This document shows, in pieces, positions 1,734 through 58,640 of a stretch of 64,000 nucleotides of DNA. Source of the stretch: Octopus sinensis (lineage: Eukaryota); assembly GCF_006345805.1 (NCBI RefSeq), contig NC_042997.1, positions 130,634,001-130,698,000 of the forward strand, read 5' to 3'. Every line of letters begins with the position of its first letter. Within the stretch, counting starts at the first letter, position 1. The notes below the pieces were generated by a model, which was not told the origin of the DNA, searched no databases, and saw only the letters and a list, made by a program, of their open reading frames with translations. The position numbers were made by a program, and so were the translations under genes.

Positions 1734-2059
1734 TATAAGTTTGCTTGGAACATAAATTATCATGCAATTCTGATGGAAAATTTTAAGATCATTTTAAAAC
1801 AAAGAGTTTGTATCATGGAACCAGGTATGGTTTCTGGCAAGTTGATATCAATAGAATTAAACTTGTCACTGCATATTTTACCTAATAAGCAACAACCTAC
1901 AAAAATTTAATGTTACATAATCATATCAACTCCACTGGTCTAGGAAGATCTGTGAAAGTCACATAATATGACTTCCACTAGAAAGTATTTCAGTGGCTGA
2001 CGTACTTAGCCTTAAAGTGTTCCAGTCATTTAGTGATGAGAAAAGATTAAAAAAAGTCT

Positions 2060-2400
2060 CCTGCTGTGTGGTTAAGAAGCTTGCCTTGGAACCATGTACT
2101 TCTGGGTTCAGTCTCACTGTGTAGCACTTTGGACAAGTGTCTTCTACTGGGTTGACCGGTGCCTTGCATGTGAATTTAGTAGATGGAAACACTGTGTGTG
2201 GCAGCTCATTGTGTGTGTGTGTTTGTCCCTCCTTCATTTCTTGTCTACCAGCGATGGTTTGTTTACATTCCCATACCATGATGATTCAGCAAAAGAGACC
2301 AACAAAATAAGCACCAGACTGAAAAAAATAAGCATGGGGGTATAACCCTCATGGTTGTGCCCCAGCATGGCCACAGTCCAATGACTAAAACAAGTTAAAA
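2060..2400 (+). mobile_element. tRNA-derived SINE (family 2)
   Basis: gctgtgtggttaagaagcttgc...gggttcagtctcactg head, CA/GT tract and cagcatggccacagtccaatgactaaaacaag tail, all shared with many copies in the window. Confidence 0.75.
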
Positions 2401-2994
2401 GATATGAGAACGCAATTAGCATGCTGCATTCTGGAAAGAACAAATGCAAGTCTCTGCATACATGATGGATAACATTACATTGATGTTTGATCAATGGCGT
2501 TCTCATCTGTGTTTCTGTGATATGGCTAAAGCTGATATGGTTTTGTGTATTCTCAGATGAGCTGCAAACAGCAACAGCAACGAAGGAGCCTTTAAAAAGT
2601 CACTCAATTTGTTAAAAATAGCAGCCAAATCTCCCACAAATTACATATTATTGTCAATAACACTGAAAGGGTACATTAGACAATGCATTCCTTTCATTTT
2701 CCTCTAGAAACAGCATTTGATTTTAACCTTTAGCTAGGAAGAAGGTAGTGGCCATCCCCTTTATAGGGTCTCAAACAATGGAAAGAAGGGAGGCAGGTAG
2801 ATTTATTCACACAGGGTTAACCTGAGTCTGAAAAGTAATGTAGCTAGGGTAGTCCATCCTGGGTGCTACTTCTATGGAGGCAGTACTCTTAGGTCTGCTG
2901 TAGAAGTTTGTATTGGGGGCTGAAGAGCAGATGGGGCAGAAAACTAAAGGGCAGCTCCAGGGAGCAAACACTCTGGTTATGCCACTGGATCTAA

Positions 2995-3064
2995 GCATCA
3001 TCATCATCACCACCACCACCACCATCATCATCACCACCACCACCATCACCACCAGCAGCAGCAG

Positions 3065-3108
<44 letters not shown>

Positions 3109-3187
3109 CCACTATCACTACCACCACCACCACCACCACCACCACAACCACCACCATCATCATCACCACCACCACCACCACACCACC

Positions 3188-3218
<31 letters not shown>

Positions 3219-3375
3219 CCACCATCACCACCACCACCACCACCACAACCACCACCATCATCATCACCACCACCACCACCACCACCATCATCATCAACAA
3301 CAACAACAACAGCAGCAGCAGCAGCAACAAAACAACAGCAGCGGTGGCGACGACGACAACAACTACTACCACCAT
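2995..3375. repeat. Compound trinucleotide microsatellite (CAT/CAC/CAG/CAA)n
   Basis: About 380 bp of interleaved atc/acc/agc/aac runs; source of the poly-T/P/V/G ORFs in the track. Confidence 0.95.
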
Positions 3376-3452
3376 CATGTACCAATATAATATATTTACT
3401 AAATGAATATATTTACTAAATGCAAACACAAAACTCATATGTACAAATGCAT

Positions 3453-3609: not shown

Positions 3610-3734
3610 TTATAGAATATAAGATGGAGAGCTTCCATGTTGCTTTCGTGTTGATTTGTCATGTTCCACTTCACAAGCATGTGAACTCCAAGTCTTAGGC
3701 ACTCCTAAGCATACAGACCATGCATTGCGACCGG
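3610..3734 (-). CDS. RGS-domain protein, terminal coding exon
   Basis: Acceptor ttgattcttttctttcattcctag. Only one frame is open: (T)GRNAWSVCLGVPKTWSSHACEVEHDKSTRKQHGSSPSYIL*. Phase 1 matches the donor at 9419 (A+CC=Thr). Confidence 0.75.
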
Positions 3735-4149
3735 CTAGGAATGAAAGAAAAGAATCAAATTAGAAAAACATGAAATTATAATTGCTTCTTGTTTCTTTAT
3801 TCATGTAACAGTCACATGACATGGTTTTATTTTCCACACTATTTTTGTATAATAGAATATCTCTTTATCTTTTACTTGTTCCAGTCAATGGTTGGTGGTC
3901 AGGCTAGAGCACCACCTTGAAGGGTTTGGTGATGAAATTGATTCCAGTACTTAATCTATCAGTCTCTTTTGCCAAAACAGTTAAGTTATAGGGACATAAA
4001 CAAACCATGACCAGTTGATAAGTGATGGGGAAACAGAAAGACACACACATACATACATATTATATATATGTGTGTGTATATATATATAGTATATGGTTCC
4101 GTGATGGTAAGATCAATCAATAAAAAAGGTACTCCATCTGGTGAGAGGT

Positions 4150-4632
4150 AATATTATTTAATAAACACAATTTATGTTCTTATGTGCTACTATCATGTTC
4201 ATGTAATGATAACATGCCAAACTGTTTTATAACACATCTGGTGCCCTAGTACAATCATCAGACACTGCCCACATGACATAACAAACAAAAAAACTGGGAT
4301 GAGAGAAAAAGAGAGAAAAAAGTATAAAAGGTGGAGGGAAGAAAAACCAGAAAATGAAAAAGAAATCAGAAAGAAGCAAAAGGGTAATTTTGCTTCTTTC
4401 TAATTTCTTTTTCATTTCCTGGTTTTTCAACCTTCCTCCTTTCATGTATACTTCTTTCTCACCTTTTCTCACTTTTTCTCTCATCCCACTTTTTTGTTTG
4501 TTATGTCATGTGGGCAGTATCTGATGATTTTGCTAGGACACTAGATGGGTTATAAAACACTGTTTGGCATGTTATTAGCACATGAAACTGATAGTAGCAC
4601 ATAAAGCATATATTGTGTTTATTAAACAATAT
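4150..4632. repeat. About 480-bp imperfect fold-back palindrome
   Basis: 4150-4381 is the reverse complement of 4388-4632 (e.g. cagacactgcccacatgacataacaaac / gtttgttatgtcatgtgggcagtatctg); 6-nt loop gggtaa at 4382-4387. Confidence 0.9.
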
Positions 4633-4827
4633 ATATATATGCATATAGGTGGGCAATTTAAACTGGTCGTGTGCATACGTGCATACATATGTATGTATAC
4701 ATTTGTATATGTAAGTATTCATATGTTGTGTATATATATATATATATATATACCAGGTGGTGCTATTAAGTTAGACATGGCCTGGGCCAATAATGGCCGA
4801 AACCTATCAAAGTATCAAAGTATCAAA

Positions 4828-4868
<41 letters not shown>

Positions 4869-4907
4869 AAATTTATCTATACAATATGTTACATTACTCG
4901 GTAGTCA

Positions 4908-4970
4908 AGATAAAACTCTGAGTTTCAGATGCCGAAGTGGAAATCCACAACACCACCTCTTCAGTTATCT
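4908..4970 (-). ncRNA. Type I hammerhead ribozyme motif (core intact) in inverted pLTR
   Basis: Minus strand reads AGATAA-CTGAAGA-GGTG[..GTGG attt CCAC..]CATC-t-GAA-ACTC a GAGT-T-TTATCT: 6-bp stem I, CUGANGA core, stem II, GAAA, palindromic stem III, GUU cleavage triplet. Confidence 0.7.
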
Positions 4971-5181
4971 GGCTATTTGAAAACGTTATGAAAAAATACC
5001 GTTAAATAAAGGGAAATTACTGTTATAACTCTGCTTGCCTGTGTACTTATACATCGCTCGCATTTTTTGTCATAAAAATTATATAAAAATACATAAAAAA
5101 TATATAAAAAATATATAAAAATATATAAATTCTTTTTGGGACATAACATAGAAAGCATGTTCTATCTGTTTTCTTTAGGGG

Positions 5182-6969
5182 ATAAAACCAAGAACTTATA
5201 CCTGGTAGATAACAGCAAATACACACAACTCTTACACAACAGCATCATTAATAATTATACTAAGGCTAGGGCACAGACATATAACGAAATTAATAAAGAA
5301 GCTAGCGTCATCGCCGCTAAACTTAAATTAGATAAAAAAATAGAAGCCCTCCCCCAAAAAGAGGCCTTTATTACTATTAAAGATCATAAAGAAAACTTCC
5401 TTTCCAACCCTAAATGTAGGCTTATCAACCCAGCCAAGTCAGAACTTGGGATTATTAGCAAAGAAATTTTAGATAAAATAAATACGAAAATTAAGACTGA
5501 TACTAGGCTAGTACAATGGTCCAATAGTATAGAAGTCGTAGACTGGTTTAAAGCTATTAAGAATAAGAAAAAAGCGTGGTTTACACAATTCGATATTGTT
5601 GATTTTTATGCCTCTATCTCTAAAGAACTGCTAGATAAAGCCCTCATCTTCGCTAGTGACTTCATAGAAATTAGTACCAATGATAAGGACATAATCTTCC
5701 ATGCTAGAAAGACATTACTTTTTAGTGAGAACGCAAAGTGGGTAAAAAACACCGACACAGAGGGCGCTTTCGATGTGAGCATGGGTTCATATGATGGGGC
5801 AGGCATCTGTGATCTAATTGGACTTTTTCTCCTAGATACCTTAGGTAAGACATTCCCTAACGTACATTTCGCCATCTACAAAGATGATGCCCTCGCCTTA
5901 ACAGCTAATACAAATGGACCAGCACAAGATCGTTTTAGGAAGGATATTATCCAGTTAATGAAACACTTTGGACTTAGTAATAACTATAGATACTAACCTG
6001 ACGGTTGTCAATTTCTTAGACGTTTCCTTAGATCTTAATAAGAATATTTATAAGCCTTATAGGAAGCCCAATGATAGACTAAGTTATATTAATGTAGGTT
6101 CATGCCATCCCCCTATAGTATTCAAAAATTTAGTTAAAAATATTAGTAAGAGGATTTCTAGCCTCTCATCTGATGAGGACATCTTCAATAGTGTTGCCCC
6201 AGTTTATAATAAGGCTTTAAAAGATAGTGGTTTTAGCGATAAAATAAAATATACACCTATCACTAGCCCAACAGTAAGGAAAAGGAATAATAGAAATAGG
6301 AAGGTCATCTGGTTTACGCCCCCTTACTCACCCGAGGTGGCCTTCAATATAGGTAAATATTTCCTAGCACTGATAGATAGACATTTTCCAGTTAACCATA
6401 CTTATAGGAAACTCTTCAATAGACACAATTTAAAAATTAGCTTTAGTTCAACTACCAATTTTAAAAACATAATCAAACATAACATACAAAAAACACAAGA
6501 AGAAAACAGCTGTTCATGCAGGAATAAAGAATTGTGCCTGCTAAATGGAGCTTGCATGTCCAAGACCATCATATATGAAGCTACTGTAAACTCTATAACC
6601 ACTAAAGACACCGTTTCGACGAAGAAATACGTGGGCCTTACAGAGGGTAATTTCAAGGCCAGGTTCAATAACCACACTTTGAGCTTTAGGCACTGGAACA
6701 AAAGAAAAGCGACACAATTGTCTAATCATATTTGGTCTTTAAGAGATAAAGGTGTCGATTATAACATACAATGGAAGATTTTGGCCAGATGTAAGCCCTA
6801 TACTAACGGCAGCGGAAGGTGCGGTCTATGCGACATGGAGAGATGGCTTATCTGGAAAAGCAGCTTAGACCCTACTACATGTCTAAATACAAGGACAGAG
6901 CTTTTCGGATCATGCCCACATGTGACTAAATTTCTGTTACGTTTTTGGTCCCTTAAAGAAAACAGATAG
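5182..6969 (+). CDS. PLE reverse transcriptase + C-terminal GIY-YIG endonuclease (one frameshift near 5977)
   Basis: RT motifs KCRLINP, QFDIVDFYASI, SMGSYDGA, AIYKDDAL. Linker C-x-C-x5-C-x5-C, then IIYEATV...KYVGLTEGNFKARFNNH and CGLC..E. The two track ORFs join by a single frameshift. The track start MGHNIES is antisense pLTR sequence, not a real start. Confidence 0.9.
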
Positions 6970-7161
6970 AACATGCTTTCTATGTTATGTCCCAAAAAGA
7001 ATTTATATATTTTTATATATTTTTTATATATTTTTATGTATTTTTATATAATTTTTATGACGAAAAATGCGAGTGATGTATAAGTACGCAGGCAAGCAGA
7101 GTTATAACAGAGTAATTTCCCTTTATTTAACGGTATTTTTTCATAACGTTTTCAAATAGCC

Positions 7162-7224
7162 AGATAACCGAAGAGATGGTGTTGTGGATTTCCACTTCGG
7201 CATCTGAAACTCAGAGTTTTATCT
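7162..7224 (+). ncRNA. Hammerhead ribozyme motif in 3-prime pLTR (core U4>C variant)
   Basis: AGATAA-CCGAAGA-GATG...CATC-t-GAAACTCAGAGTT-TTATCT; same fold as 4908-4970 but CCGAAGA replaces CUGAAGA. Confidence 0.6.
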
Positions 7225-7320
7225 TGACTACCGAGTAATGTAACATATTGTATAGATAAATTTCCTCTATTTACATAATATTGAGGTCTCTTTCTTTCTT
7301 TTGTTATCTTACCGTTTTAT

Positions 7321-7369
<49 letters not shown>

Positions 7370-7701
7370 TATTTATGTGCTATCTGTGTATATTTCACTG
7401 ATGAAGGCAAAACATTTCTTATGCAGAGCCAGAAATCTGGGATCTGGAATTGTCCAGTAATATTTTTGCTAGTTTATTTTCTGTCTTTGTCTTCTCTCCT
7501 GGTGCTGTATGAACATTTAATATGGTTTCAGAGTCAAGTTTTGGCTGCTATTTCTAGCGTGGTGGTATCTCTTAAATACCCTTAATTATAATTTTAATAA
7601 TTAATCATTACCTTTGAGGTTTTCTTTCCCATGCTAGCCACCTGATAAGACCGGTATTTTAAATAACGATCTTATCCTTATTTATATAAATACATATATA
7701 C

Positions 7702-7753
<52 letters not shown>

Positions 7754-9418
7754 CCCAAGTTGACTAAAGCCTTGCAAGTGGATTTGGTAGACGGAAGCTG
7801 AAAGATGTTCATTATATATGTATGTATCTATGTATGTGTTCTTGTGTTTGTGTCTGTACCCCATATTGCTCGACAGGTGTTGGTTTGTCTACATCCTCTC
7901 GACTTAGTTTCAGAGAAAGAGACCAATAGAATAAGTACCAGACTAAATGAAAAATAATCTGTTCAACTACAACCCTTCAAAGTGGTGCCCCAGTATGGCC
8001 ACAATCCAATGATTAAAATAAGTAAGAGATGAAAGATAAAGATAAATTACAAGACAATGAGGAAACTTATATGTGATTGCTCAAACAGTTAAAACTAGCA
8101 GCCAAATCTCCCTCATTTCTCATCCTATTATGTTATCAAAAGACAGAAACATTGGATAATGTGTTTGGAAATGACTAGAATGTCCTTGGTCATTGTTTTC
8201 TAAACCAAAGCTGGTTCAAATGTGAACATGATAAATTAATGTTTCTTTTTTGCTTTATCTTTATTTTTCAGAGGTGCTGGTACCTTTCTGATTTGGCGCG
8301 CTCTAAGATGAGAAGGGTGATATATGATTTGGCCCTCTCTAAGATGAGAAGGGTATATTGACCATAAGGATGGATATAGTGGATAGAAGAGTGGATATAT
8401 TATGTTAGTGATGGGGGTGGATATATTGGTTGTTGGGTTAGGTCTTTTGGTGACAGGTATGTATATTGGCTACATGGGTGGATATCATCATCATCATCAT
8501 CATCATTTGATGTCTGCTTTCTATGCTGACATGGGTTGAACATATCGGCGATAAAAGTGGATATACTGCTATTAAGAGTGGTGATGAAGTTAAAAGATGT
8601 ATTTTGGTGATAGTGCAGATATATTGATAGAGAAAGGTATTGTTAGTGACAAGGGTAGCTATCTTTGATGACTAGAGTAGATATATTGTTGATAGGAGAA
8701 GATATATTAATGACAGGGATGGATATAAAGAAGAGAGTTGTGTTTAAATCTGATATAAATTAAAAAAGTGATGATGGTGGTGGTAGGAGGAGTAAGATGT
8801 TTATGGTTGCTGACACAGATTCTGCATTTTTTCAATTTTGTTCAAATTTGGTATACAGATTTAGTTTTGTATACTAATTATGAAAATAGAATTCATTTTT
8901 GTTATAAATTAATAAACAAAAAGTTAATTCCCCTTAAATTTCGCAAATTTGGGGTAATTTTAGCCAATCAAAAGTCACTGTTATGTACATGACTGTAAAT
9001 ATCATATTGGTATCTGTTTCCATAATAACAAGCAAAGCTGTTGTCTGACGCCTTCACCACGGGAATAACATCCTCAAGTTATGTTCCTCTGTTATTTCTG
9101 TCTGTCATTTTGTGACAAACTGCTATAATGCAGAAAATGCCAGCTTCCAAATCCTGTTTTCTGATTAGACAGAAAATTATCAAATTTTGAACCTCTGTAA
9201 CACTTTCTGGAAATAAATGTATCTTTCTGGAAATAGCATCTTTCTGGAAAAGTTTCTTTTTGGAAATAAATGTATTCTAAATTCAGATTCAGTGAGAATA
9301 ATGACACCAGACATAACAAATTTGAAAATTTTCACTTAATTTTAAAATTTCCAAGTTTGTGACAACAATCAAAAAGATTTGGGGAGAGGAGGAGGAAAAG
9401 GGAAAGAGAATTACTTAC

Positions 9419-9558
9419 TGCCTTCCATGAATGAAGAAAGATCATTTTTACCAAGTATGTTATGTCTTGTAATGTCACTTTGAATTACTTTTAGCCTTAA
9501 TTTCACTTTTGCTTTAAATTTTTCTCTTCCACCACATGCATTTTGTTCTAGATGCATG
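9419..9558 (-). CDS. RGS-domain protein, coding exon (140 nt, phase 2 to 1)
   Basis: Acceptor tgttttgtggtatctttacag, donor gtaagt; single open frame MHLEQNACGGREKFKAKVKLRLKVIQSDITRHNILGKNDLSSFMEG. Confidence 0.8.
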
Positions 9559-11359: not shown

Positions 11360-11636
11360 TCTATATTTAAGAGATGAGGAATTATGTACATTATTTACAT
11401 TCAATGGATATTTGTCCTCATGTTGTTTGTTAACACAACATTTCAGCTGATATACCCTCCAGCCTTCATCAGGCATCTTGAGGAAATTTCGAACCTGGGT
11501 TCTCATTCCTAAGGTATTTTTCGATGTTGTTGTTATTATTATTATTATTATTCAAGTCACTGCCTGGAATCGAAACGTGTTAACAACAAACAAGATGAGA
11601 ACAAATATCCGTCAAATGTAAATAATGTAAATAATG
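11360..11636 (-). mobile_element. PLE pLTR relic with internal inversion junction and degenerate hammerhead
   Basis: 11385-11445 is the reverse complement of 11572-11636 (gtgttaacaacaaacaagatgag..aaatatcc..aatgtaaataatg). The minus strand has CTGATGA-aggctg..cagct-GAAA at 11472-11441. Confidence 0.55.
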
Positions 11637-12252: not shown

Positions 12253-12900
12253 TTAGTCAAAAAGTTTTCTGTAAATGTGATGGAATTCACCTGTTATTTT
12301 GTTCATTCTTCCAGGATGTGATGTCAGTAATTCACAAATAAATTTATCCTCGTGTGTTTTGAGGTCTAAAAGTGCAGTAGAATCAGAGTATTTCCCGAGA
12401 ATGTGTACTTCCAGCTGTTCCTGAAAATTACAGTTGTTTTGTGTAAAATGTTTGGCAAGTTCTGTTAAACTATAGTTATTGTGCCTGATATCATCTCTAT
12501 GCCTATTTAGACTTTCATTTTAATTATTCTGTAGCGTTTGGTGCACGTTACTGTGTACATGAGATGAAATTTCTCACAGGTACCACCTTCTCTCTAAATC
12601 ATAACATTTCTATTACAATTTGAGATGGAATTGACTTGACTTATGTTGTTGTATACTAAACAGGCCTTACCACTCTTGCAGCTGTTTTTTGGGGTACAGC
12701 ATTCAGAAACTCCAATAGCAGTTTTGTTGAGATTAGTGGTAGTGGTTAATTGTTCTCTTACATTTTTATTGCATCTAAAGGCTACATAAAGTGGATGAAG
12801 GAATATTTGTTTGGAATGAGGATATTCTTCTGAGATACACTGATATCTTTCAGGCAACACTTTTGAAATGTAAATAAATTTTTGGTGCCGATTAATCTCA
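12253..12900 (-). mobile_element. Degenerate Penelope-like element C-terminus (GIY-YIG endonuclease)
   Basis: Minus-strand translation across breaks: YVAFRCNKNVREQL...EGGTCEKFHLMYTVTCTK...SLNRHRDDIRHNNYSLTELAKHF...LEVHILGK...HEDKFICELLTSHPGRMNK...YRKLFD*. Confidence 0.75.
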
Positions 12901-13009
12901 AAAGGAATTCAATCACAAATGTCATTTTGGCTTCTAGAATAATACATGCAAGCCTGACTTTCCTTGCTAATTTTAGTTATGTCATTTGTTGTTGCTGACA
13001 ATCATCATC

Positions 13010-17119: not shown

Positions 17120-17463
17120 TGTTACACCCTCTGTGTTTTTCTAGGTCAAGATTTTGAGGGCCAAGAGGGTGTATATGCCTGTTTGCAAGCAAAAGTGTGG
17201 TACAAGCTGTTAAGTCATACTAGCTTGAAGAATGTTCTTAAGAACATTGATCACAAAGTCAGTATCTCTGATGTGAGGATTTTAGGTTGTGTCTACAAAT
17301 GTGTGTATAAATATGTATAAGTACAGACATACATGTATATATTTGTGTGATTGTGTCTGAAAGAAAAGGAGAAAGTGCATATATGTGCGCATGTGTAAAC
17401 ATGCAATCAAAAGAGATGTGAATAAGGAATACAAAAGAGATGTGAATAAGGAATGCAACTTAC

Positions 17464-17588
17464 ATATCCCAAGCTTTATAAATTGATGGTAAGACATCAA
17501 GTGCTAAATTATGAAACAGTCCATGTGAAATACCTTCTCTCTTAAATTTCATTATTGCTTCTGACAGTAAAGTTGGTGAGACATTTAA
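17464..17588 (-). CDS. RGS-domain protein, coding exon (125 nt, phase 0 to 2)
   Basis: Acceptor ttcttctttatctattgttacaacag, donor gtaagt. Single open frame LNVSPTLLSEAIMKFKREGISHGLFHNLALDVLPSIYKAWD resembles RGS helices 6-8. Confidence 0.85.
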
Positions 17589-18388: not shown

Positions 18389-18664
18389 AGTAATGAGATT
18401 ATATAACTGATGGAAAGCCTTCAAGATGGGACCACAGCATGGCCACAATCCAATAACTGAAACAAACACAAGAATATTAATGTGGTAGGCACCTACCGTT
18501 ACATCTCTAAATCTATCTACTAGAACAAAAAGTATGTTGTCTTCTCTCTCTTTACACGAAAGTGGTTTTAAGACATATCAATGATTTCTAGCATGGTACA
18601 TTTACAGGATGGCCCCTACACATGTATAACAACAAATACCAACAAGAAATTAAAAGATAGGTAC

Positions 18665-18791
18665 GGGTGAATATGTAAAATTTTCTGTACTGAGGAACGT
18701 CTTAATTATGCTTTGTGCTTTATTCTTCATTCGCCGCTTTTCTACTGGTAAATAGCAATGCTTTTTGTAATTTTGAAATGCTTTCTTATAA
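18665..18791 (-). CDS. RGS-domain protein, coding exon (127 nt, phase 2 to 0)
   Basis: Acceptor tttctttcattgcttcacag, weaker donor gtacct. YKKAFQNYKKHCYLPVEKRRMKNKAQSIIKTFLSTENFTYSP fits RGS helices 4-5 (A..I...FL....SP.LN). Confidence 0.75.
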
Positions 18792-19544
18792 CTGTGAAGC
18801 AATGAAAGAAATACTGTGAGAATAATTTCTGAAACAGACACGCAAGGCTAATTAAATCAAAATTAACACTGCCCCCATCACTTTCCCCAAGATGCAATAC
18901 AATGCTTGGTGCATGCTACTCATCATCAATCTCATCGCTGTCATCATCGTCATCGACAGAATTGTCTTGAGCATTGCCATCATCATCATTTAACATCTGT
19001 CTTCCATGTTGGCATGGGTAAGACAGTTTGACAGAATCCAACGAATTGGAGAACTGTGTCTAAATCCAATGTCTATTTGGTTTGATTTCTACAGCTGAAT
19101 ACCCTTCTTAACACTGACCACTTTACAGAGTGTATCAGGCGAGTTTTTCATGACACCAGCACTAGTGAGGTTGCCATGTATCTTGCAAGACAAAACATGA
19201 CTCCTCAATCAAGTGAGATTGTAGTAGAAAGGGAGGTGGCTTTATGTCAAGTATTGAGGGGCTAAAGTATAAAAAAGGGACAGACACAGGGGTCTTACTA
19301 TAGAGGAGATATATGGCTAGGCCATGTCATATAACTGTGGCTAGCTGAAAAGAAGACAATGACAGGAGCATTGAGGTGTCAAAATGTGCTCCCAAGACAC
19401 AAGAAAGCGAGGAGTATAAGAGAGAATATAAAGTGAGGATCAGGAGCATGTGAGAGGAGAGTAATGGATAGTTAAAGATGGGGGTATAGTTGCAAGAATA
19501 AGAACCAGCTAGTGAAAGTATTTTGTTACCACTGTAGATAATAA

Positions 19545-24091: not shown

Positions 24092-24203
24092 CTTAATGCC
24101 TCAATAAAGAAATCCACTCTCATTTTCAATATTCGATACTCTGACAGTTTTAAATACTTCAATCTGGGTTTCAGATGACTTATTCTTCTTCTGTTCAGCT
24201 TTT
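24092..24203 (-). CDS. RGS-domain protein, coding exon (112 nt, phase 1 to 2)
   Basis: Acceptor ttaatttgtttgtttattccag, donor AAG/gttgag. KLNRRRISHLKPRLKYLKLSEYRILKMRVDFFIEAL(S) joins YKKAF to give the RGS-like F..FL...L.F...E.YK region. Confidence 0.75.
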
Positions 24204-24344
24204 CTGGAATAAACAAACAAATTAATCATAACTTCATCTCTTTGTATTATGGCAGTGTCAACTAAACTTAGCTTCCTATGGCTGAAAATGAGTTTTTCTC
24301 ATATGATGTAATTTGTGGAAAATAAATCTAATTGTTTTTTTTTA

Positions 24345-26525: not shown

Positions 26526-27968
26526 AGTATTTTGAAAAATAAACTGGCTATTGATAAGGAAACTTCTATATTGAAGAAGGGATTGGACCAAATAATTTTG
26601 CTTGTGCTTTTTGTTTATTGTGGGTGTGATACTATTTATATAATGTGCTTTTTCCTGGTAATGCTGTTATGAAGAGCTTCATTATATGGAATGTAATGAT
26701 TATTGACTATTTGTTCATTTGAAGCTAAAGAAAGAAGTCTCAATGACATGTGTTTGATTAAGTTTCTAAATATATTTTTAGCATGATTTATAATCATATT
26801 TTGGGGTTGGCTGCTTACAATGACCATTTTTGTTTTCTTTTTTAATAGGGTTTATAAATAAAGGATTCATATTCTAGGCTAACATTGAGAAAGTTAACTG
26901 ATTTAAGACCTATTGCTACAATAATGAAGAATCTTAGGTTTTGGAAGAAGAGATGTAATTCCTTCCCAATTAATCAGTTTTTTGTGGGTTGAAGTCTCTC
27001 TGGAGGCATAGAGCATCATTTCTGCAGAGACCACCAAAAACAAAAGGAACTTTTATGCGTGGTACTGATAATATATATGGGCCAACAATATCGCTTACCT
27101 CAGTGGAGTCCTTTGATCCTATGATAATATCAAATGGTTCTTTATAATCTGTTGTGTCTGGGGAGAGTCATTTTCTTTTTGTGCCTTTTAATGTAACACA
27201 CTCACTGGTAAAATTTCCACTTATTTCTTATTTTTATTTTCCTAAAATTTTCGTTGCGTCTTGCAACCTTTTCAATAGTCTTGACTCTCTTTATAAGAGA
27301 GTTCTTTATAAGTTTTCTTAGAAGGTAATTACTGACTTGTAGTATTATTTCTGTTTTACTGTTAATGTTGGTTACTATCATTTTAGCAATGTTCAAAGTG
27401 GCTGTAAGTATTGGTATTGCAGTGTAATAACCTTTGGTGTTGCACTGTATGCGTATACACACCCAGGATACACTACACTGTAAATTGTAGAACCTTAAGA
27501 AGGATATCAAGCTGTCTAAAACCATGCCAAAGGTGACACTTGAGCTCAACGTCATCCTATAGCTTGCCAGATCCTGTCAAACCGTCTAACCCATGCCAGC
27601 GAACAAAATGAATGTTAAATGGTGGTGGTGGAGGTAGTGATGATGATGATGATAATATTGACATAAAAGTTATAAGATTAAACCTGGTCAATCTCATAAC
27701 ATTGTACCTCTGGGTAAGTGCAAATCAACTGAGAGAATTATAGTATTACTTGAGCCATTATAGAGTGCTTAATAGAACCCTACTATAAATGGTCAATGGT
27801 AGAACCTACATCATTTAGTTACCAAACCTCCTTAATACACATATACTTTATAAAGAGCCATAGTAGTGAACTGTTGTATAATTGTGCAACTTTTGAGTAA
27901 AATTTAATTGAATATGTAGTGCAACTTAAATTATCAGGAATTAGTATTTTAAAATAGATTTTACCGAC

Positions 27969-28106
27969 CTTCAGTTATTTCTTGAATATCACGTAGTTGT
28001 TCTTGGTATAAGCATTCTATATAGTCTGAGAGTGTAGAAGATAGACCGTGTTTTCTGATTTCAGTAAGCAAATAACCTATTTTCCTAAGAATGTTACTAC
28101 CACTGA
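27969..28106 (-). CDS. RGS-domain protein, coding exon (acceptor at 28106 or 28102)
   Basis: Acceptor ttttttctctgctttttag, donor GAAG/gtcggt; SGSNILRKIGYLLTEIRKHGLSSTLSDYIECLYQEQLRDIQEITE; phase 1 end matches 24203. Confidence 0.75.
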
Positions 28107-29301
28107 CTAAAAAGCAGAGAAAAAAAATAATGGAATGGAAAAGAAAACTAGTGATATGAAAAAGATATTTCAGTGAGAACATTGAAAAATTAATGTTTTG
28201 AAATATTTAAAAGATGAGTGGAAAGGTATTTAATTCTATTGTGTAAATTAATAATAAATATTGAGTTTGATCCCATATACAACAGATTGGCTTTCATTTG
28301 TTGCTTTTCTTTTCCTTGTTTCAGTCACTGGGTTGTGACCATACTAGAGTACAGCCTTGAAGAGTTTAATTGAACAAATTGATCCCACTAATTATTATTA
28401 ATTATTATTTTAAGTCTTTTATTTATACTGAATCAATAAATTATGTGGCTATTAACAAACCAGCACTATTTATCCAGTGGCAGTGGGTGGGGGCGAACAC
28501 AAACACAAAGATGCACAAACATACACACACACACACACACACACATAATATATATATGTGTTGTTGTCTATTCCTTCTTGAGCCATGCCTGGTTCATAAG
28601 TTTCCCAGTTTCATTGGGGTATAGGTTCCCCACCTGAACAAGACATCGGTCTGTCGCAGGTGAGCTGCTAGATGCAGGAGGAAAGAGTGAGAGAAAGTTG
28701 TGGCAAAAGAGTCAGCAGAAATTTGCGATTACCTTCTGCCAGAGCAGCGTGGAACTTTGGTGTTTTGCTCATAAACACACACACATCACCTGGTCTGAGA
28801 TTCAAACCTGCAATCCCTCAACTGCGAGTCCACTGCTTTAACTACTAGTCCATGTGCCTCCACTGTATATGTGTGAATGTTATGTATGTGTGTGAGAGCT
28901 GAATCATTGGTGTAACTATGATGTTCTGGTGATCTGATGAGCCAGCTTTCTTTATTTGCATAGATTTGTGAATATACAACTGTATTGTATAATGCATAGC
29001 ATGCATACTAATGCAAACATGTAAACATAATTGTTACTACATGAAGAAGGCTGTGAAATGGCTGTAATTCTAAGGATGTCAAATAGTTAAATAAATATAT
29101 TTATCTCTCATACCTCCTGATTTTTTATGTTATATAAACTGCTCATGAAGTAATTGATTGGATTTCCTGGATTCCAGCAGTATGGACACACTGCACTACA
29201 CTTCTCTGTATTGGATTACAATGTGGTCAGATAACCAACACCATTGGAGGAGCTTTCTGGGATAGCCACATAATTGTCTGAATCTATATTATATACTAAA
29301 A

Positions 29302-30542: not shown

Positions 30543-30644
30543 CAACTTTTCCTCATTGCTCTTTTGAAGGACATTAGGAGTTCAAATTTTGGTCGCTTCT
30601 GAGATTGTTCGGATTGGCGGAAAGTTTCTTCATATTTCCGGAAC
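30543..30644 (-). CDS. RGS-domain protein, coding exon (donor at 30543 or 30547)
   Basis: Acceptor ggtttttgtttgatcag; single open frame FRKYEETFRQSEQSQKRPKFELLMSFKRAMRK; phase 2 start matches 35381 (TG+G=Trp). Confidence 0.7.
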
Positions 30645-31130
30645 CTGATCAAACAAAAACCATTATTACAAGCATAGTTTCAGATCATAAAACTAATGGT
30701 AAATTAAATTGAAATAAAAATGCATTCTCTACTGAAATCTACCAGTTTTAATTAAAACTGTAAATGTAGTCAAATTTAAATCAGACAAGGTGTAGAACAC
30801 CATCATACTTTAATGTGGGTTCACTAATCTTACCAGTTATATTCTAAGGCTTTAAGGACTATAGGGTAGGCTGCTTTCAAGAATGGTATAGTCACATATT
30901 CACTTGTAGACAATAGATCAATTATTCTGTCCGAACACTGCAAGGCATCCCCTGTAAAATGATAATAACAAAGAGCTGTCTAAGCCTTTTAAGGATTTGT
31001 TTTTATCAAGGTGATACCTTAGCATGGCCACAGCCTAATGACTAAAACAAATAAAGAATAAAAAAGCAAATGAAGCCAGAAAGGCAGAGAGAGACATATT
31101 GGGCAATATTACTGCCTTAAGTAAAAAGCT

Positions 31131-36047: not shown

Positions 36048-37880
36048 ATAATATATGTTTTATGAATATTTTTTATCATGTATGATATATTATGGAGCGG
36101 ATAGGTCTACCACGCAGCACATCACCACCTTTGTCATTTCATTTGTGAAATTAAACTGCTGTCATAATTACAATCTAGTGCTAATTAGGTCACCAAGATA
36201 ACAACATTATCTGTTACTTCCAGTAAGTCAGCAAGTAGTTTATGTACTTTCATTTGCCTCTCCCTCTTTCCTGCCAATTACTTCTGCATATCTAATTAGT
36301 GCGTACGAAATCCTTGTTGTTAGCCTGTTAAAAAGTCCACTGAATTTTTTGTGTATCCTTTGCTTATTACACATTAACTTACAACTAACTCTGTTCTAAC
36401 ATACCTAGCTACACAACTTCCACAAAGATTCAGACAGCTGTGTGGGTAAGAATCTCTTTTACCCACATAGCTGTCGGGCAAGGAGATTGTATTTTTGATT
36501 CCTAAAAGGACTTGTGTAAGAGGTTTATTGCTTCAAAATGGCTTTGTATGAAGTTAATGTAAGAGCTTTATTGCCTCCTTAATGTGTTATCATGTAAGAG
36601 GTTTGTAGCCTCAAAATGTTTTATAAAAGAACAATGTGCTCGGGTATACAGCAATCGGCGGGTGTTGCTGTTGCCCTCATTATTATCATATTGTTAATCA
36701 TTCCATCTCATTATGTCTATGTCCAGCCCACAGCTTCCTTTCTTTGAAAGGCCCTTGTGGTCAATTAAATGAATGAACAAAAGAAGCTTTCTTCACAACT
36801 TCTTAGTTTCGAATTCACTCCTATGTGCAGCACTTTAAGAAATATCTTTTACTATGGGTTACTCAAAGATTTCTGAATGAGATTTGGACAGAAAATGTGT
36901 GAAAGCCCGTACCAGAAGGAATGTTCCAGTTCTTGTCTGGTTGATTTAATCCTATAACATTTAAACTGACCATATCTGGCCAAAATATTCTACCTGCTTC
37001 ATGCTCAAGCCAGCTAGATCTGGCCCCTCACATCATCATCTACATTTAATGTCTATTGTCCATATTGGCATGGGTCTATCCTACAATATCATTTTAAAAA
37101 TAAATAAGCTGTACATGTGGCAGAGTAATCTGAATGCTAAAGGGTTAAAACCATTAACTGGCCCTTTGGTACCTTTAGCATTGTAAGCATTTGGACCAGT
37201 CTCCAGTTTAGGGATAGTTTTGTCTTACTGCCCTTACCCCCATAGCTGCTGCCACCACCACCACCACTTCTATCATCATTAAGCAGTGTTTGTATTCCAT
37301 GCTGGCATGGGTTGAAGGGTTTAGCAGTATCCAATAAATCAGAGGACTGCATTATTTTCCGATCATCATTATCTTCATCATCATTTAGTGTCAACTTTCT
37401 ATGCTGGCATGGGTTGGACAGCTTGACTGAAAGTGGTAAGCTGGAGAGGTGCACCAGGTCCCAAACTGATTTGGCATGGTTTCTATGGCTGGATACCCTT
37501 CCTGGTGCCAACCACTCCAAAATCCAAAAGTATAATGAGTGCTTTTTATGTGCCCCCAGCACAGGTGCCAGTTACGTGACACCAGCATTGGCCACAACTA
37601 TAATTTCACTTGTCTTGATGAGTCTTCTCAAGCATGGCATAACACCAAAGGCCTTGGTCACTTATCATCTTTGTGAGACCCAATGTCTGCCATAATTAAA
37701 AGGAAAAAAAATGTCAATAATGGGGGTTTGTGTTCGCTTTTTCTACCTAACATTTTGCATTTTGACATGTTAACGTCTTTTTATTTTTATTAATTTTAAT
37801 TTTGGAATTCCTTTTAGTGGTTCTTTGATGTATTCAACTATCATTATAAATACCAATAATGAATGATTAAAAAACCTTAC

Positions 37881-38065
37881 CATTATCGGTTTTAAAAAAT
37901 CTCCTCCAAACTTGGTTAACTTTGTATTGTTTAAAATTTTTATCTTGTATTTTGTTTATTTCAGAAATCAAGTCAAGGAACTGTAGTGGTGCAAGAGATC
38001 TATTTTTCAAGAGAAACCTGCGAAAATCTTCTTTATATAGTTTGCTAAAAACATCCCTAAAGTAC
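37881..38065 (-). CDS. RGS-domain protein, coding exon (185 nt, phase 2 to 1)
   Basis: Acceptor tcttgctattgttactttcag, donor gtaagg. YFRDVFSKLYKEDFRRFLLKNRSLAPLQFLDLISEINKIQDKNFKQYKVNQVWRRFFKTDN resembles the RGS N-terminal half (FRRFL...L.FL..I). Confidence 0.8.
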
Positions 38066-38124
38066 CTGAAAGTAACAATAGCAAGATGTTAGCACTGTTA
38101 TTCTTATCCATTACAATGGCAATA

Positions 38125-38687: not shown

Positions 38688-38824
38688 TATTTGAGCTTTT
38701 AACTGATTCTAACTGTCATGAAATGAATGACGGTAACATCGAAAGCAATATATATATAGAATGTAATTCTTTCATTAGTCTTCATATAGGTTCAAAATAA
38801 ATCTACAGAAAGAAAAACACTTAC

Positions 38825-38862
38825 GTTGGGGGTACAGTTGGTCTTCCTCTTCTCACTGACAT
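38825..38862 (-). CDS. Candidate start-codon exon of the RGS-like gene (exon possibly 38825-38938)
   Basis: Strong donor AAC/gtaagt and acceptor ttattgcag at 38939. ATG at 38862 has an in-frame TGA just upstream. MSVRRGRPTVPP ends in phase 2, matching 38065. Confidence 0.45.
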
Positions 38863-44716: not shown

Positions 44717-46178
44717 GTTCTATTTCTTACAAAATATTTTGTTACTAACACCATACAAACTATTTCTATCTTTTACACCTTAGGCAGAATTTATTTCTCT
44801 TTCGAAAGATGCAGACAATAACTATTTTTTATACAACTTGAAGAATTCTAATGCTAAATTAATATAAACGGCAAAATTAGTTAATGACCATATTATGATT
44901 TTATTTAAATCTTTAGATTGTAGCAACAAGAACCAAATACATATTAGTACTTTGTGCCGTAGCCTTTATTCTTAATAACAGCTGAACAACGCCTCGGCAT
45001 TGAATTCGCTAAGTGATTACAAAATTCTATGGGAATGTTTTGCCATATTTCATTGATATAATCGAATAATTGTTTTACATTAGACAGTTTTTTAGCATGA
45101 AGTTCTTTGGAAACATAATTCCACAAGTTCTTGATCGGATTCAGGTCCGGGCTCTGGAGAGGCCATTCGATTACGTCAATATTATGGTGATCAAAAAATT
45201 CCATAACCTTTTACGTCAATATTATGGTGATCAAAAAATTCCATAACCTTTTTGACTATTGTCCGGCTGATAAATAGCCCCCAGAGGCATTTGGTGAGTC
45301 AAATATGGCACAACATTATCCTTTAGTAGATTCATATAATCTACACTATTTAACTTTCCATCAACTTTAATTAAAGGGCCAACACCAAAGCTACTAAATG
45401 CCGCCCACACCATCACACCCCCACCCCTGCTTGCGCCGTCTTTTTCACGCATTTCGGATGGAATTCCTCGGTTGGGCGACGTCTGATGTGTTTTACTATC
45501 TGATCCAAATATACAGAAGCGTGACTCGTCACTCCAAAGAACCCTGCACCAATCTACGGCTGTCCATTGGGCATGCCTTTTAGCGAAATTAAGGCGTTTG
45601 AGTCGATTTCTTTCGGAGCGATTCGTCCATGTAGTCTAAATTCTTTCAAACGGTTGCGGACGGTTTGTGGTGTAAAAATAACACCATTCTCTTTGGACAA
45701 TTGTTTACAAATGTCAACAGCTGTCAGCATTCGGTTGCCTTCGAAAGTCGGTGGATTCGATGGTCCAACTGCGCCGTCGTTTTTCTTGGGGCGCCAGTCC
45801 TTTGCCGATCTTTATATTGACCAGTCTCTGAGTATGACTTCCATGCTTGCACACAAGCCGTTTTACTGCACTTTACTTGCTTGCTGATGTTCGAAAAGGA
45901 AACTTTTTGCTTGTGGAGTAATACGATGTTTGCTCTCGTGACTGGACTGAGACTACGTTGTTTTCCCATTATTAATCAATTGTATAATGACGTTAAATTA
46001 TAACACTATATAGTGCAACTAGGCTAGTTGTGTGACCACCCATTTTTGGCAAAAAAATTGCATACATACAACATGGTCTTAAACTAATTTTGCCGGTAAA
46101 TTTGAAACGTGTTAGTAACAAAATATTTTGTAAGAAATAAAACTTTTATCATCGGTCTTAAATTTATTTTCGCCAGTG
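44716..46178 (-). mobile_element. Tc1 transposon (DD34E type), disrupted
   Basis: Transposase fragments 45969 to 44944 (RTGAPRKTT; GGGVMVWAAF; WPLQSPDLNPIKNLW with catalytic E read as K). TIR at 46110-46178 ends in cagtg|ta; left TIR truncated at ~44716; 40-bp tandem duplication at 45171-45250. Confidence 0.88.
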
Positions 46179-47460
46179 TATATTTTATTTATTTACTTTT
46201 TCTTGAATCGTTTTTTTTGTGTCTGATTGAGTGAGAGAGAGAGAGAAAGAGAGAGAGGTGTGTTTTGCTCTGTGTGTGTGTGTGTGAGTGAGAGAGCAGG
46301 ACAGAGTGATAGCGTAATTTTTATTTATTTAGTTTTTCTCGCTTCTTATTTTAGCGTGAGTGATTGACTGAGAGAAAGAGAGAGAGAGGTGTTGTTATGT
46401 ATGTGTAAAACGGCTCACACACACACACACACACACACAGCAACACACACAACACACACTTTTTGTCTTGCACCCCCATCAACACATACACATGTCCCTA
46501 TCAATTTTCTCTCTCTTTCACTTTATGTTAACATCAAACGAAATGTACATTTCCAGCCACAAAAATAAATAAATAAATAAATTTTTACGGAATTTACCGA
46601 ACGCGTATGGTAACAGCTAAGCTGCGTACACACCTTCGAGTCAAAACGAAAGATTGCCAATTATATATTTAATATAAAAGATACAATTACATGAAATATG
46701 GGTATAACTTATAGAGAAGAGTAAAGAATTGGGTGGGTATTACCTTTTACGAAAGAAATTTTTTGCTCCAAAAATTAAATTTTTTGTAACCCTCACTACT
46801 AATTCCGTGTCCTTTTCTGGTAAATGTTTCTATCTGTTTCATGAAACGGTTGCAATAGTAAAAAAAAAATAAAATATCTCGAAATATATGTAACACCAAT
46901 AATATTGCCTGAGCTAATGTAACAGCGACTTCTCTTAATCATGCTTGCAAAAGTAATAAGGAAACTATAATACAAAGTTTCTAGTTATGCACATTTCATA
47001 TTTCGTTGTCAAAGTTTTTTTAAAAAGCCTGATACAGTCACTATCATATTCTTTTCTACTCTAGGCACAAGGCCCGAAATTTTTTGGGAGGGGGCCAGTC
47101 GATTAGATTGATCCAGTGCACAACTGGTACTTAATTTGTCAACCCCGAACTTTTAAAAACATGATTAAATATATATATATATATAAGGATGGGGAACAAA
47201 ATTAGTAACAGGGGTAAAATGAGTAATTTTCGAATTGTTATTTTCTCTCTACCTGTTTGAAATCTGTTGCATCATAGACACAGCTATTGCATCATTGTGT
47301 TTGTGCTGTTATATAATCTTTAAGTGTAGAAATTTGTCAGAATAATTGCTGAAGTCGAGAGAGTTTGGAGATTTATCCGTGGAAAAAAAAAAGAGAAAAA
47401 AGAGAAGAAAAAGGAACAGAAAAATCATGCCGTAAAGTTTATGTAACTGATTGCTTAAAG

Positions 47461-49900: not shown

Positions 49901-50424
49901 AAGGATGGCTCTGCACAGATATATGTATATGTATGTATATATATATATATGAATGTGTGTGTGTGTGTGTCTGTGTTTGTCCCCCCAACATCACTTCACA
50001 ACCAATGCTGGTGTGTTTACGTCCCCATAACTTAGCGGTTCGGCAAAAGAGACCGATAGAATAAGTACTAGGCTTCCAAAGAATAAGTTCTGGGGTTGAT
50101 TTGCTTGACTAAAAGTGGTGCTCCAGCATGGCCACAGTCAAATGACTGAAACAAGTAAAAGATTAAAAGAGTAAAAGAGAGCTGTAATGTTGGGAAGAGG
50201 GAAAATATTGTTTTTCCTTTTTTATTTTTAATGTTGTCTGTTATATTTAATTTGTTAAGTGAGCAGTAAATGTGACTGACTGTTTCTTTTCAAAGATATA
50301 TTTAATCAGCCTGGCTCTAGTCGTCTAACAACTTTATTAGGTCTGCACTCCTCAATTTACTCAAGAGCTTGTTTGAATGCTCACCGACAGAAACATAATT
50401 ATGTTTGATAACATGTTTTGTTTA

Positions 50425-58469: not shown

Positions 58470-58640
58470 GACAATTATTCAATAGCCAAGATAGAGTTTC
58501 GGCTGCCGAGGTGGAAATCCACAACACCATCTCTTCGGTTATCTGGCCATCTGAAAAATGCCTCTATTTATTCTATTTACATAATATTGAGGTCTCTTTC
58601 TTTCTTTTGTTATCTTACTGTTTTTACCAATATATATATA
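58470..58640. mobile_element. Non-autonomous derivative of the 4867-7322 PLE terminus, with internal inversion
   Basis: 58505-58547 matches the pLTR ribozyme region in minus orientation; 58572-58632 matches the 7265-7322 tail in plus orientation; flanked by (TA)n. Confidence 0.8.

What the first reader, a model, noticed from the sequence alone, without database searches (positions are those of the whole stretch)
4908..4970. Core-intact hammerhead ribozyme lying sense in the last intron of the host RGS-like gene
Seen: the inverted pLTR copy reads, on the minus strand, as a complete type I hammerhead (6-bp stem I AGAUAA/UUAUCU, CUGAAGA, stem II, GAAA, stem III ACUC/GAGU). The 3-prime copy carries a core mutation (CCGAAGA). 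The host gene is also on the minus strand, and this site is inside its predicted last intron (3735-9418). Known: PLE pLTRs carry hammerheads, often minimal forms with palindromic stem III that act as dimers. Inference: the inversion has placed a possibly self-cleaving RNA in the host pre-mRNA, where it could affect splicing or 3-prime end formation, or release PLE-derived RNA. Atypical features: GUU cleavage triplet, one extra U before GAAA, 1-nt stem III loop.
Basis: partly seen in the sequence, partly recalled or inferred. Interest (0 to 1): 0.8.

Follow-up and report, generated by a model that had tools for sequence, protein, structure and literature searches.

The report
Decayed hammerhead-like motif in retrotransposon
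The hammerhead-like RNA motif is really there, in a gene's last intron, but it belongs to a very common octopus retrotransposon whose thousands of copies carry a non-standard core, and its "intact" box is a single chance mutation, so it is most likely an ordinary, inactive relic.

Summary
It lies in the inverted, 5'-truncated partner copy of a Penelope-like retrotransposon (PLE, about 4866-7322) inserted in a (TA)n microsatellite. The host claim also holds. Annotated Octopus sinensis and O. vulgaris RGS-domain proteins splice exactly across 3735-9418, so the motif is sense in the last intron.

The interpretation does not hold.
- **Direction of mutation:** genome-wide, 2053 copies read CCGAAGA and 90 read CUGAAGA. 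The window's box is therefore a private CpG-to-TpG change, not a retained core. The opposite-strand decay product (CCAAAG) occurs 63 times, and a neighbouring non-CpG C-to-T only 13 times.
- **Remaining core defect:** the extra pyrimidine before GAAA is fixed in the family (3450 copies with it, 4 without).
- **Model scores:** no Rfam hammerhead model matches, even at E up to 10. A model built from canonical octopus hammerheads gives 13 bits.
- **Folding:** the predicted best fold pairs CUGA with UCAG. In the host transcript the motif is fully complementary to its antisense twin.
- **Arrangement:** inverted partner copies are routine for this family.

No RNA reads could be laid, so expression and cleavage are untested. 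An earlier first-reader note (s1-114235) describes a U4C unit in a similar arrangement elsewhere in this genome. Verdict: degenerate PLE hammerhead relic, low interest.

The parts
4908..4970 (-). Hammerhead-like motif, the copy with the CUGAAGA box (the finding). The predicted cut would lie between 4914 and 4913.
   Evidence: Sequence read. Full-length alignment to model R1 at 13.2 bits. No Rfam hammerhead hit.
4866..5187 (-). Inverted, 5'-truncated partner copy of the PLE 3' region (left arm of the inverted repeat).
   Evidence: Inverted repeats I3, I5 and I7, 96-97% complementary to 6944-7277. It differs from the other arm at 4 of 201 compared positions.
5136..5996 (+). PLE open frame, reverse-transcriptase part (5'-truncated).
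   Evidence: ORF list. Weak RVT_1 match, E 0.008, below the curated cut-off.
5968..6969 (+). PLE open frame in a different reading frame from the RT part. [quoted passage not shown]
   Evidence: ORF list. A better-kept copy (L084) gives a weak GIY-YIG match, E 0.024. Atlas neighbours carry HTH_animal, GIY-YIG and RVT_1.
6944..7322 (+). 3' terminal region of the PLE (right arm), plus a 56-nt 3' end (7267-7322) that the inverted arm lacks.
   Evidence: The same 3' end recurs at 58570-58629.
7162..7224 (+). Twin motif with the family-standard CCGAAGA box. It is antisense to the host gene.
   Evidence: Identical to 31 of 34 sampled copies. R1 score 7.9 bits.
4829..4866 (.). (TA)n microsatellite, left flank of the insertion (target).
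   Evidence: A second copy (L087) also starts right after a (TA)n run.
7324..7361 (.). (TA)n microsatellite, right flank of the insertion (target).
3735..9418 (-). Last intron of the RGS-domain host gene. It starts GT at 9418-9417 and ends AG at 3736-3735.
   Evidence: The O. sinensis LOC118764206 protein (P0004) and O. vulgaris P0005 both join ...SSFMEG|TGRNAWS.... Splice sites read. Exon mapping.
9419..9557 (-). Penultimate coding exon of the host gene (MHLEQNACGG...SSFMEG).
   Evidence: tblastn of P0003. The same string is in P0004 and in the window ORF.
3610..3734 (-). Last coding exon of the host gene (TGRNAWS...SPSYIL plus stop).
   Evidence: tblastn of P0004 residues 361-401 at 3735-3613. 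Sequence read.
37879..38082 (-). Exon holding the start of the RGS domain. Further exons by tblastn bounds: 38824-38862, 30833-30955, 30548-30643, about 27958-28107, 24094-24204, 18656-18793, 17463-17582.
   Evidence: Pfam RGS E 3e-4 on this exon alone. Colinear mapping of P0003 and P0004.

Best explanation
The motif is the hammerhead-derived segment that every copy of one young, very abundant Penelope-like retrotransposon (PLE) carries in its terminal repeat. It lies about 190 nt after the ORF end and, in long tandem copies, 177 nt before the next ORF start. The window holds a 5'-truncated insertion into a (TA)n microsatellite, with the usual adjacent inverted 5'-truncated partner copy. This insertion sits inside the last intron of an RGS-domain gene (the O. 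sinensis LOC118764206 model).

The family form departs from the hammerhead core in two ways: C instead of U at position 4, and an extra pyrimidine between C11.1 and G12. After insertion, the inverted arm took a CpG-to-TpG transition that happens to recreate CUGAAGA, plus an A-to-G change in stem II. The second defect remains.

Inferred, not shown: the RNA does not self-cleave at a biologically relevant rate. In the host pre-mRNA it is either caught in a local rod that pairs CUGA with UCAG, or in a duplex of about 330 bp with the antisense arm transcribed 2.2 kb earlier. Its effect on the gene would then be that of any intronic inverted-repeat transposon.
For: - **Element anatomy:** inverted arms, RT and GIY-YIG-like frames, (TA)n on both flanks, and partial tandem copies upstream of long copies.
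- **Family census by exact 33-mers:** CCGAAG 2053, CTGAAG 90, CCAAAG 63, and the non-CpG neighbour C-to-T 13.
- **Independent origin of T copies:** 31 of 34 of the best-matching copies read CCGAAGAGATGG. The T copies fall in several subfamilies and share no private marker.
- **Extra pyrimidine before GAAA:** 3450 copies with it, 4 without.
- **No other ribozyme candidate in the unit:**
- **Rfam:** no hammerhead match at the gathering score or at E up to 10. The same genome does hold canonical mini-hammerheads above the cut-off.
- **Own model from those canonical copies:** 13.2 bits for this copy and 7.9 for the twin.
- **Folding:** MFE -19.5 kcal/mol for a non-hammerhead rod against -12.4 for the hammerhead fold. 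The motif pairs 63 of 63 with its antisense twin, -114.7 kcal/mol.
- **Literature:** inverted 5'-truncated partner copies are usual in PLEs, and families without canonical hammerheads proliferate (PMC8557442). Hammerhead core mutants do not impair PLE insertion in vitro (PMC11167929).
Against: - No biochemical or RNA-end data were obtained here.
- U4C lowers but does not abolish activity in a viroid hammerhead, and some core insertions (U13a) are tolerated (PMC3088659).
- A PLE hammerhead can be protein-assisted (PMC11167929), so a non-standard core might still cleave.
- The motif is kept in two subfamilies, with changes seen only at unpaired positions. This could mean constraint.
- Co-transcriptional folding could favour local structure over the long duplex.
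- Thermodynamic predictions ignore tertiary contacts.
Confidence: 0.75

Rival explanations
1. The U4 copy is an active type I hammerhead that cuts the host pre-mRNA inside the last intron, alone or as a dimer. This would affect splicing or 3'-end formation, or release PLE-derived RNA.
For: The CUGAAGA box, G10.1-C11.1, GAAA, A15.1-U16.1, an allowed GUU site and three helices can all be drawn. The motif is sense in a confirmed intron. Model R1 aligns end to end. PLE mini-hammerheads work as dimers, with low activity in vitro (PMC4209133).
Against: - The extra U before G12 is still present and is fixed in the family.
- The box arose by neutral-looking CpG decay.
- There is no Rfam match.
- The competing rod fold is 7 kcal/mol better, and the same U strengthens it.
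- The intron holds only one sense copy, so no same-strand partner is near for a dimeric helix III, and the near-palindrome has a central A.A mismatch.
- The antisense arm can sequester the motif.
Confidence: 0.08
2. The family motif is a working RNA element of the retrotransposon, but not as a ribozyme. It would be a hammerhead-derived stem-loop near the 3' end, kept for a role in retrotransposition such as protein binding. The window copy would then be a passive, slightly mutated instance.
For: The motif is present in at least 3450 copies across two subfamilies. The subfamily-diagnostic changes inside it fall at unpaired positions, U35/C35 and the extra U44/C44. Stem II is a stable hairpin in every predicted fold. 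In a lizard PLE, reverse transcription starts at a stem-loop in the RNA, and that element's protein assists hammerhead cleavage (PMC11167929).
Against: There is no covariation to test, because copies are about 99% alike. My sample was conditioned on an exact 33-mer, so conservation of the 5' half is forced. The flanks are not clearly more variable than the free part of the motif.
Confidence: 0.2
3. Chance resemblance. The segment never was a hammerhead, and the boxes and helices are coincidental in an AT-rich 3' UTR.
For: Loose box patterns occur at chance frequency in the window. Hammerhead-like matches are expected by chance in large genomes (PMC3088659). Model scores are low.
Against: The segment sits where PLE hammerheads sit, in the terminal repeat between ORF end and ORF start (PMC4209133, PMC8557442). 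It shares the CUGAAGAG and GAAAC boxes of the canonical octopus mini-hammerheads, apart from C at position 4 in the family form, and in the same order and register. No other candidate exists in the unit.
Confidence: 0.12

Closest known systems
Minimal type I hammerheads of metazoan Penelope-like elements (Cervera and de la Pena 2014, PMC4209133)
   Same: Located in the PLE terminal repeat. Type I topology with an open stem I. Long helix II and a G10.1-C11.1 pair. Very short helix III with a near-palindromic sequence that could extend as a dimer. Copies also found in opposite strands a few hundred bases apart.
   Different: The family form has C at position 4. All copies have an extra pyrimidine on the 3' side of helix II (before G12), rather than the usual unpaired base between A9 and G10.1. 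The site is GUU instead of GUC. The palindrome has a central mismatch. There is no Rfam match, and only 8-13 bits against a model of canonical octopus copies.
Canonical mini-hammerheads of the same genome (retrozyme or PLE repeats; Rfam RF00163 hits)
   Same: The CUGAAGAG and GAAAC boxes appear in the same order (the family form has C at position 4), and the overall register is shared.
   Different: Those copies read GUAC-CUGAAGA-GACCC..GGGUC-GAAAC-AUGU-GUC-GUAC, with no extra core base. They score 34-48 bits, and some occur in tandem about 430 nt apart (L036, L037).
PLE families without canonical hammerheads (Naiad and Chlamys; Craig et al. 2021, PMC8557442)
   Same: High copy number without a canonical hammerhead. 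(TA)n microsatellite targets. Partial tandem plus inverted 5'-truncated insertions.
   Different: Naiads have an N-terminal GIY-YIG domain. Here the GIY-YIG-like part is C-terminal to the RT, as in the canonical PLE clades, which that paper reports as always carrying canonical hammerheads.
Intronic hammerheads of amniote genes (RECK, C10orf118; PMC3088659)
   Same: A hammerhead-type motif lying sense in an intron of a protein-coding gene.
   Different: Those are single-copy, conserved across species, have consensus cores and cleave in vitro. This one is a recent transposon copy with a non-consensus core and no evidence of conservation or cleavage.

Membership tests
Hammerhead ribozyme (type I) | 5' core box C3-U4-G5-A6-N7-G8-A9 | tested here: met
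   CUGAAGA is present in this copy. It is a derived state: the family form is CCGAAGA, 2053 copies against 90.
Hammerhead ribozyme (type I) | 3' core box G12-A13-A14 directly following the 11.1 residue of helix II | tested here: not met
   One extra U lies between C11.1 and G12. An extra pyrimidine is present in 3450 copies and absent in 4. In the predicted MFE it pairs with A9.
Hammerhead ribozyme (type I) | G10.1-C11.1 closing pair, A15.1-U16.1 pair and a non-G residue at the cleavage site | tested here: met
   G14-C43, A48-U56 and U57 of the 63-nt motif.
Hammerhead ribozyme (type I) | Three helices compatible with the active fold | tested here: inconclusive
   The helices can be drawn: stem I 6 bp and AU-rich, stem II long, stem III 3 bp. 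The hammerhead fold is 7.1 kcal/mol above an MFE rod that pairs CUGA with UCAG. The dimeric helix III has an A.A mismatch.
Hammerhead ribozyme (type I) | Match to curated covariance models (Rfam RF00163 and the other hammerhead families) | tested here: not met
   No hammerhead hit at the gathering score over the window. None at E up to 10 on 701 nt or 91 nt. An own model of canonical octopus copies gives 13.2 bits.
Hammerhead ribozyme (type I) | Covariation supporting the helices | tested here: inconclusive
   Copies are about 99% alike. The only subfamily differences seen in the motif are at unpaired positions.
Hammerhead ribozyme (type I) | Site-specific self-cleavage | not testable with these tools
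   This needs in vitro transcription or end-specific RNA sequencing. The one read-laying run failed.
Penelope-like element (C-terminal GIY-YIG type) | Single ORF with a reverse transcriptase followed by a GIY-YIG endonuclease | tested here: met
   Weak RVT_1 (E 0.008) and weak GIY-YIG (E 0.024), both below Pfam cut-offs. GIY/YIG-type residues are visible in the sequence. Atlas neighbours carry HTH_animal, GIY-YIG and RVT_1. The window copy is 5'-truncated and in two frames.
Penelope-like element (C-terminal GIY-YIG type) | Pseudo-LTRs from partial tandem copies, frequent 5' truncation and an adjacent inverted 5'-truncated copy | tested here: met
   An upstream partial tandem copy is present in L087, L099 and L101. 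The 3' end has about 1539 first-look candidates against 251 for a 5'-ward ORF segment. At least 21 head-to-head pairs occur among the first 100 listed copies. The inverted arm in the window is shown.
Penelope-like element (C-terminal GIY-YIG type) | Canonical hammerhead in the pseudo-LTR | tested here: not met
   Only the non-canonical motif is present, and there is no other candidate in the unit.
RGS-domain host gene with last intron 3735-9418 | Annotated protein whose exons map colinearly and join across these coordinates | tested here: met
   P0004 (O. sinensis, PF00615) and P0005 (O. vulgaris) both join at SSFMEG|TGRNAWS. GT and AG are read. The O. bimaculoides model instead ends in the intron. 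No RNA reads were seen here.

The most novel reading that the evidence does not exclude
The C4 plus extra-pyrimidine motif is a new, still active hammerhead core variant, perhaps assisted by the element's protein, that supports a PLE family of at least 2000-3000 copies. The chance U4 copy in this intron then cleaves the RGS-gene pre-mRNA more efficiently than the family form.
Probability: 0.06. Interest if true: 0.6.

Novelty: new member of a known kind. Interest (0 to 1): 0.2.

Why it matters
As proposed, a working ribozyme in a host pre-mRNA would matter for gene regulation by transposon-borne ribozymes. The evidence points the other way. The "intact" box is a CpG decay product in one of thousands of copies, and a second core defect remains.

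The modest point of wider interest concerns the family. It has a C-terminal GIY-YIG-like endonuclease part and at least 2000-3000 near-identical copies, yet it carries only a doubly non-canonical hammerhead-like motif. This fits in vitro and comparative hints that hammerhead cleavage is dispensable for PLE spread (PMC11167929, PMC8557442). It also contrasts with the statement that canonical hammerheads are universal in those clades. The clade assignment was not tested by phylogeny here.

The intronic inverted repeat of about 330 bp is a plausible double-stranded RNA source in a cephalopod, but that was not tested.

Tried and rejected
- **RNA evidence:** The look-up of sequencing runs listed only contig-kept runs, none on record as RNA. 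There is therefore no evidence on expression, ends, splicing or editing.
- **Earlier notes near the window:** none found.
- **The look-up of encoding contigs for the O. sinensis protein:** nothing on record.
- **My first reading of the host gene, corrected:** from the O. bimaculoides model, the CDS seemed to end at 9411-9413 with no last intron. The O. sinensis and O. vulgaris models showed otherwise.
- **A canonical hammerhead elsewhere in the full unit, for example near the ORF start as in the lizard element:** rejected. Long copies show only this motif, plus one stemless CTGAAGA..GAAA string inside the ORF.
- **U4 as the ancestral state of an older subfamily:** rejected. C is the large majority in the older subfamily too, and T copies share no private marker.
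- **Alternative registers for helix II that would absorb the extra U:** none pairs (reasoned from the sequence).
- **A second hammerhead-like string at 11420-11472 (-):** it has G at the would-be cleavage site, no stem I and no Rfam hit. Taken as chance.
- **First global alignment of sampled copies:** misleading because of truncated copies. Redone as a local alignment.

Full report
**Observation.** On the minus strand, 4970..4908 reads AGAUAA CUGAAGA GGUGGUGUUGUGGAUUUCCACUUCGGCAUC U GAAA CUCAGAG U U UUAUCU.
- a 6-bp AU-rich stem I;
- the CUGAAGA box;
- a long helix II closed by G-C;
- one extra U before GAAA;
- a short, near-palindromic helix III;
- a GUU site, with the would-be cut between 4914 and 4913.

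A twin at 7162-7224 (+) reads CCGAAGA and GAUGG instead. The loose box pattern is no rarer than chance in the window (23 matches against 17 expected), so context has to carry the argument.

**Anatomy of the element.** The two motifs lie in inverted arms, 4855-5187 and 6944-7277, that are 96-97% complementary.
- Between the arms the plus strand holds two overlapping open frames, 5136-5996 and 5968-6969.
- The first frame gives a weak RVT_1 match.
- The second has a Cys-rich linker and GIY-YIG-type residues. A better-kept copy gives a weak GIY-YIG match, and Atlas neighbours carry HTH_animal, GIY-YIG and RVT_1.
- The insertion is bounded by (TA)n runs at 4829-4866 and 7324-7361.
- The right end has 56 further bases (7267-7322) that the inverted arm lacks. 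These recur at a third small copy at 58570-58629.

This is the standard picture of a 5'-truncated Penelope-like element with an adjacent inverted 5'-truncated copy in a microsatellite target, as described in PMC8557442.

In longer copies elsewhere, a partial tandem copy lies upstream, and the motif sits 177 nt before the ORF start. The unit is about 2.6 kb. It holds no other CUGANGA..GAAA candidate with stems and no Rfam ribozyme. The motif therefore occupies the place where PLE hammerheads normally sit (PMC4209133).

**Family census.** The window lies on a 213-Mb contig of a 2.72-Gb genome. The contig length equals the one recorded for the O. sinensis protein.
- The 141 nt around the motif have about 1539 first-look candidates, and the best 40 are 99-100% identical.
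- Of 34 motifs in the fetched loci, 31 read CCGAAGAGATGG.
- Exact 33-mer counts over the genome are:

| Variant | Copies |
|---|---|
| CCGAAG (family form) | 2053 |
| CTGAAG (as in the window copy) | 90 |
| CCAAAG (same CpG, other strand) | 63 |
| TCGAAG (neighbouring non-CpG C) | 13 |

The T at core position 4 is therefore what CpG decay produces. Its frequency is similar to that of the opposite-strand product and five to seven times that of a non-CpG transition.

In 20 sampled T copies and 20 C copies, the T copies fall in several subfamilies and share no private marker. C is the large majority in the older subfamily as well. The two arms in the window came from one insertion and differ at 4 of 201 compared sites. 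At the box and in stem II it is the inverted arm that departs from the family form.

**The second core defect.** An extra pyrimidine between C11.1 and G12 is present in 3450 copies and absent in 4. It is U in the younger subfamily and C in the older one. No alternative register of helix II absorbs it. In the predicted MFE it pairs with A9. PLE mini-hammerheads usually have an unpaired base on the other side of helix II, between A9 and G10.1 (PMC4209133), so this is not the known variant.

**Model tests.**
- Rfam finds no hammerhead in the window at gathering scores.
- It finds none at E up to 10 on 701 nt or on 91 nt.
- The same genome does contain canonical mini-hammerheads: 8 above the RF00163 cut-off among only 74 scored candidates. 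They read GUAC-CUGAAGA-GACCC..GGGUC-GAAAC-AUGU-GUC-GUAC.
- A covariance model built from ten of these aligns end to end to exactly 4908-4970 (-). It scores only 13.2 bits, with helix II treated as an insertion. The twin scores 7.9 bits.

I read this as descent from a PLE hammerhead with loss of the canonical core, not as membership.

**Folding.**
- For the window copy the MFE (-19.5 kcal/mol, half of the ensemble) is a rod in which C-U-G-A of the box pairs with U-C-A-G of the helix III region.
- The hammerhead secondary structure costs -12.4 kcal/mol, a gap of 7.1. The gap is 4.1 for the family form. The same C-to-U change that restores the box strengthens the competitor.
- The host-sense transcript carries the antisense arm about 2.2 kb upstream. 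The motif pairs 63 of 63 with it, because the two differences become G.U pairs, at -114.7 kcal/mol. For 205-nt arm parts the value is -342 kcal/mol.
- Only one sense copy lies in the intron, so a same-strand dimer partner is not at hand.

These are predictions, not measurements.

**Host gene.**
- An exon at 37879-38082 (-) gives a weak RGS match and led to an O. bimaculoides RGS-domain protein.
- The O. sinensis protein LOC118764206 (401 aa, PF00615) and an O. vulgaris protein both continue ...SSFMEG|TGRNAWS...SPSYIL.
- The last 41 residues map to 3735-3613, with GT at 9418-9417 and AG at 3736-3735.

The intron 3735-9418 is therefore confirmed at annotation level, and the motif is sense within it. 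About four in ten listed family copies sit in head-to-head pairs (at least 21 pairs among the first 100 places). One arm of such an insertion is thus sense to any host gene. The arrangement needs no special explanation.

**Mechanism and rivals.**
- **Most likely (0.75):** a hammerhead-derived relic with no relevant self-cleavage, acting on the gene only as an intronic inverted-repeat transposon.
- **Structural role (0.2, not exclusive):** the family motif serves the retrotransposon as a structure rather than as a catalyst.
- **Chance resemblance (0.12).**

Against a firm dismissal: U4C hammerheads keep some activity in vivo and some core insertions are tolerated (PMC3088659). A PLE hammerhead was protein-assisted in vitro, and its catalytic mutants did not impair insertion (PMC11167929).

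**Limits.** No reads could be laid. I sent neither that stretch nor its inverted twin to any search tool afterwards. Counts are exact-word counts and are lower bounds for diverged copies. An earlier first-reader note on another piece of this genome (s1-114235) describes a U4C hammerhead unit in tandem-plus-inverted arrangement. That fits the family form counted here, though I did not compare the sequences.

Noticed in passing
window 58453-58640: A third, tiny copy of the same family sits next to (TA)n runs. It is a minus-strand fragment with a diverged motif (CCGAAGA box, C before GAAA, shortened helix III region), followed directly by the plus-strand 3' end of the element (58570-58629).
   Followed up: partly
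window 47451-50061 (+): A different Penelope-like element is present. It has open frames with RT-like sequence and a GIY-YIG-type end (LIYALTCSGCQERYIGQTK) after a CxxC-rich linker. Its terminal regions were not examined for hammerheads.
   Followed up: no
window 12256-12908 (-) and 11420-11472 (-): Another PLE-like ORF fragment, and about 800 nt downstream a CUGAUGA...GAAA string with a 7-bp helix III. It has G at the would-be cleavage site and no stem I, and there is no Rfam hit. Probably chance.
   Followed up: partly
G000:C16:25146363-25146839 (L036, L037) and other RF00163 hits: Canonical mini-hammerheads occur in this genome, some in tandem about 430 nt apart, which looks retrozyme-like. 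First-reader notes report similar arrays elsewhere in the genome.
   Followed up: partly
window 2807-3419: A long imperfect trinucleotide repeat of period 9-12 lies just downstream of the host gene's stop codon. It gives spurious low-complexity open frames on both strands.
   Followed up: no
window 44947-45975 (-) and 51648-52707 (+): Open frames that look like Tc1/mariner-type transposase remnants, judged by eye only. Many SINE-like repeats are also shared between 1.3-2.4 kb, 15.4-16.3 kb and 18.1-18.5 kb.
   Followed up: no
window 9411-9420 (-): The O. bimaculoides gene model reads through the donor site and stops two codons later. The O. sinensis and O. vulgaris models splice to 3734. This is either alternative 3' ends or an annotation difference.
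   Followed up: partly
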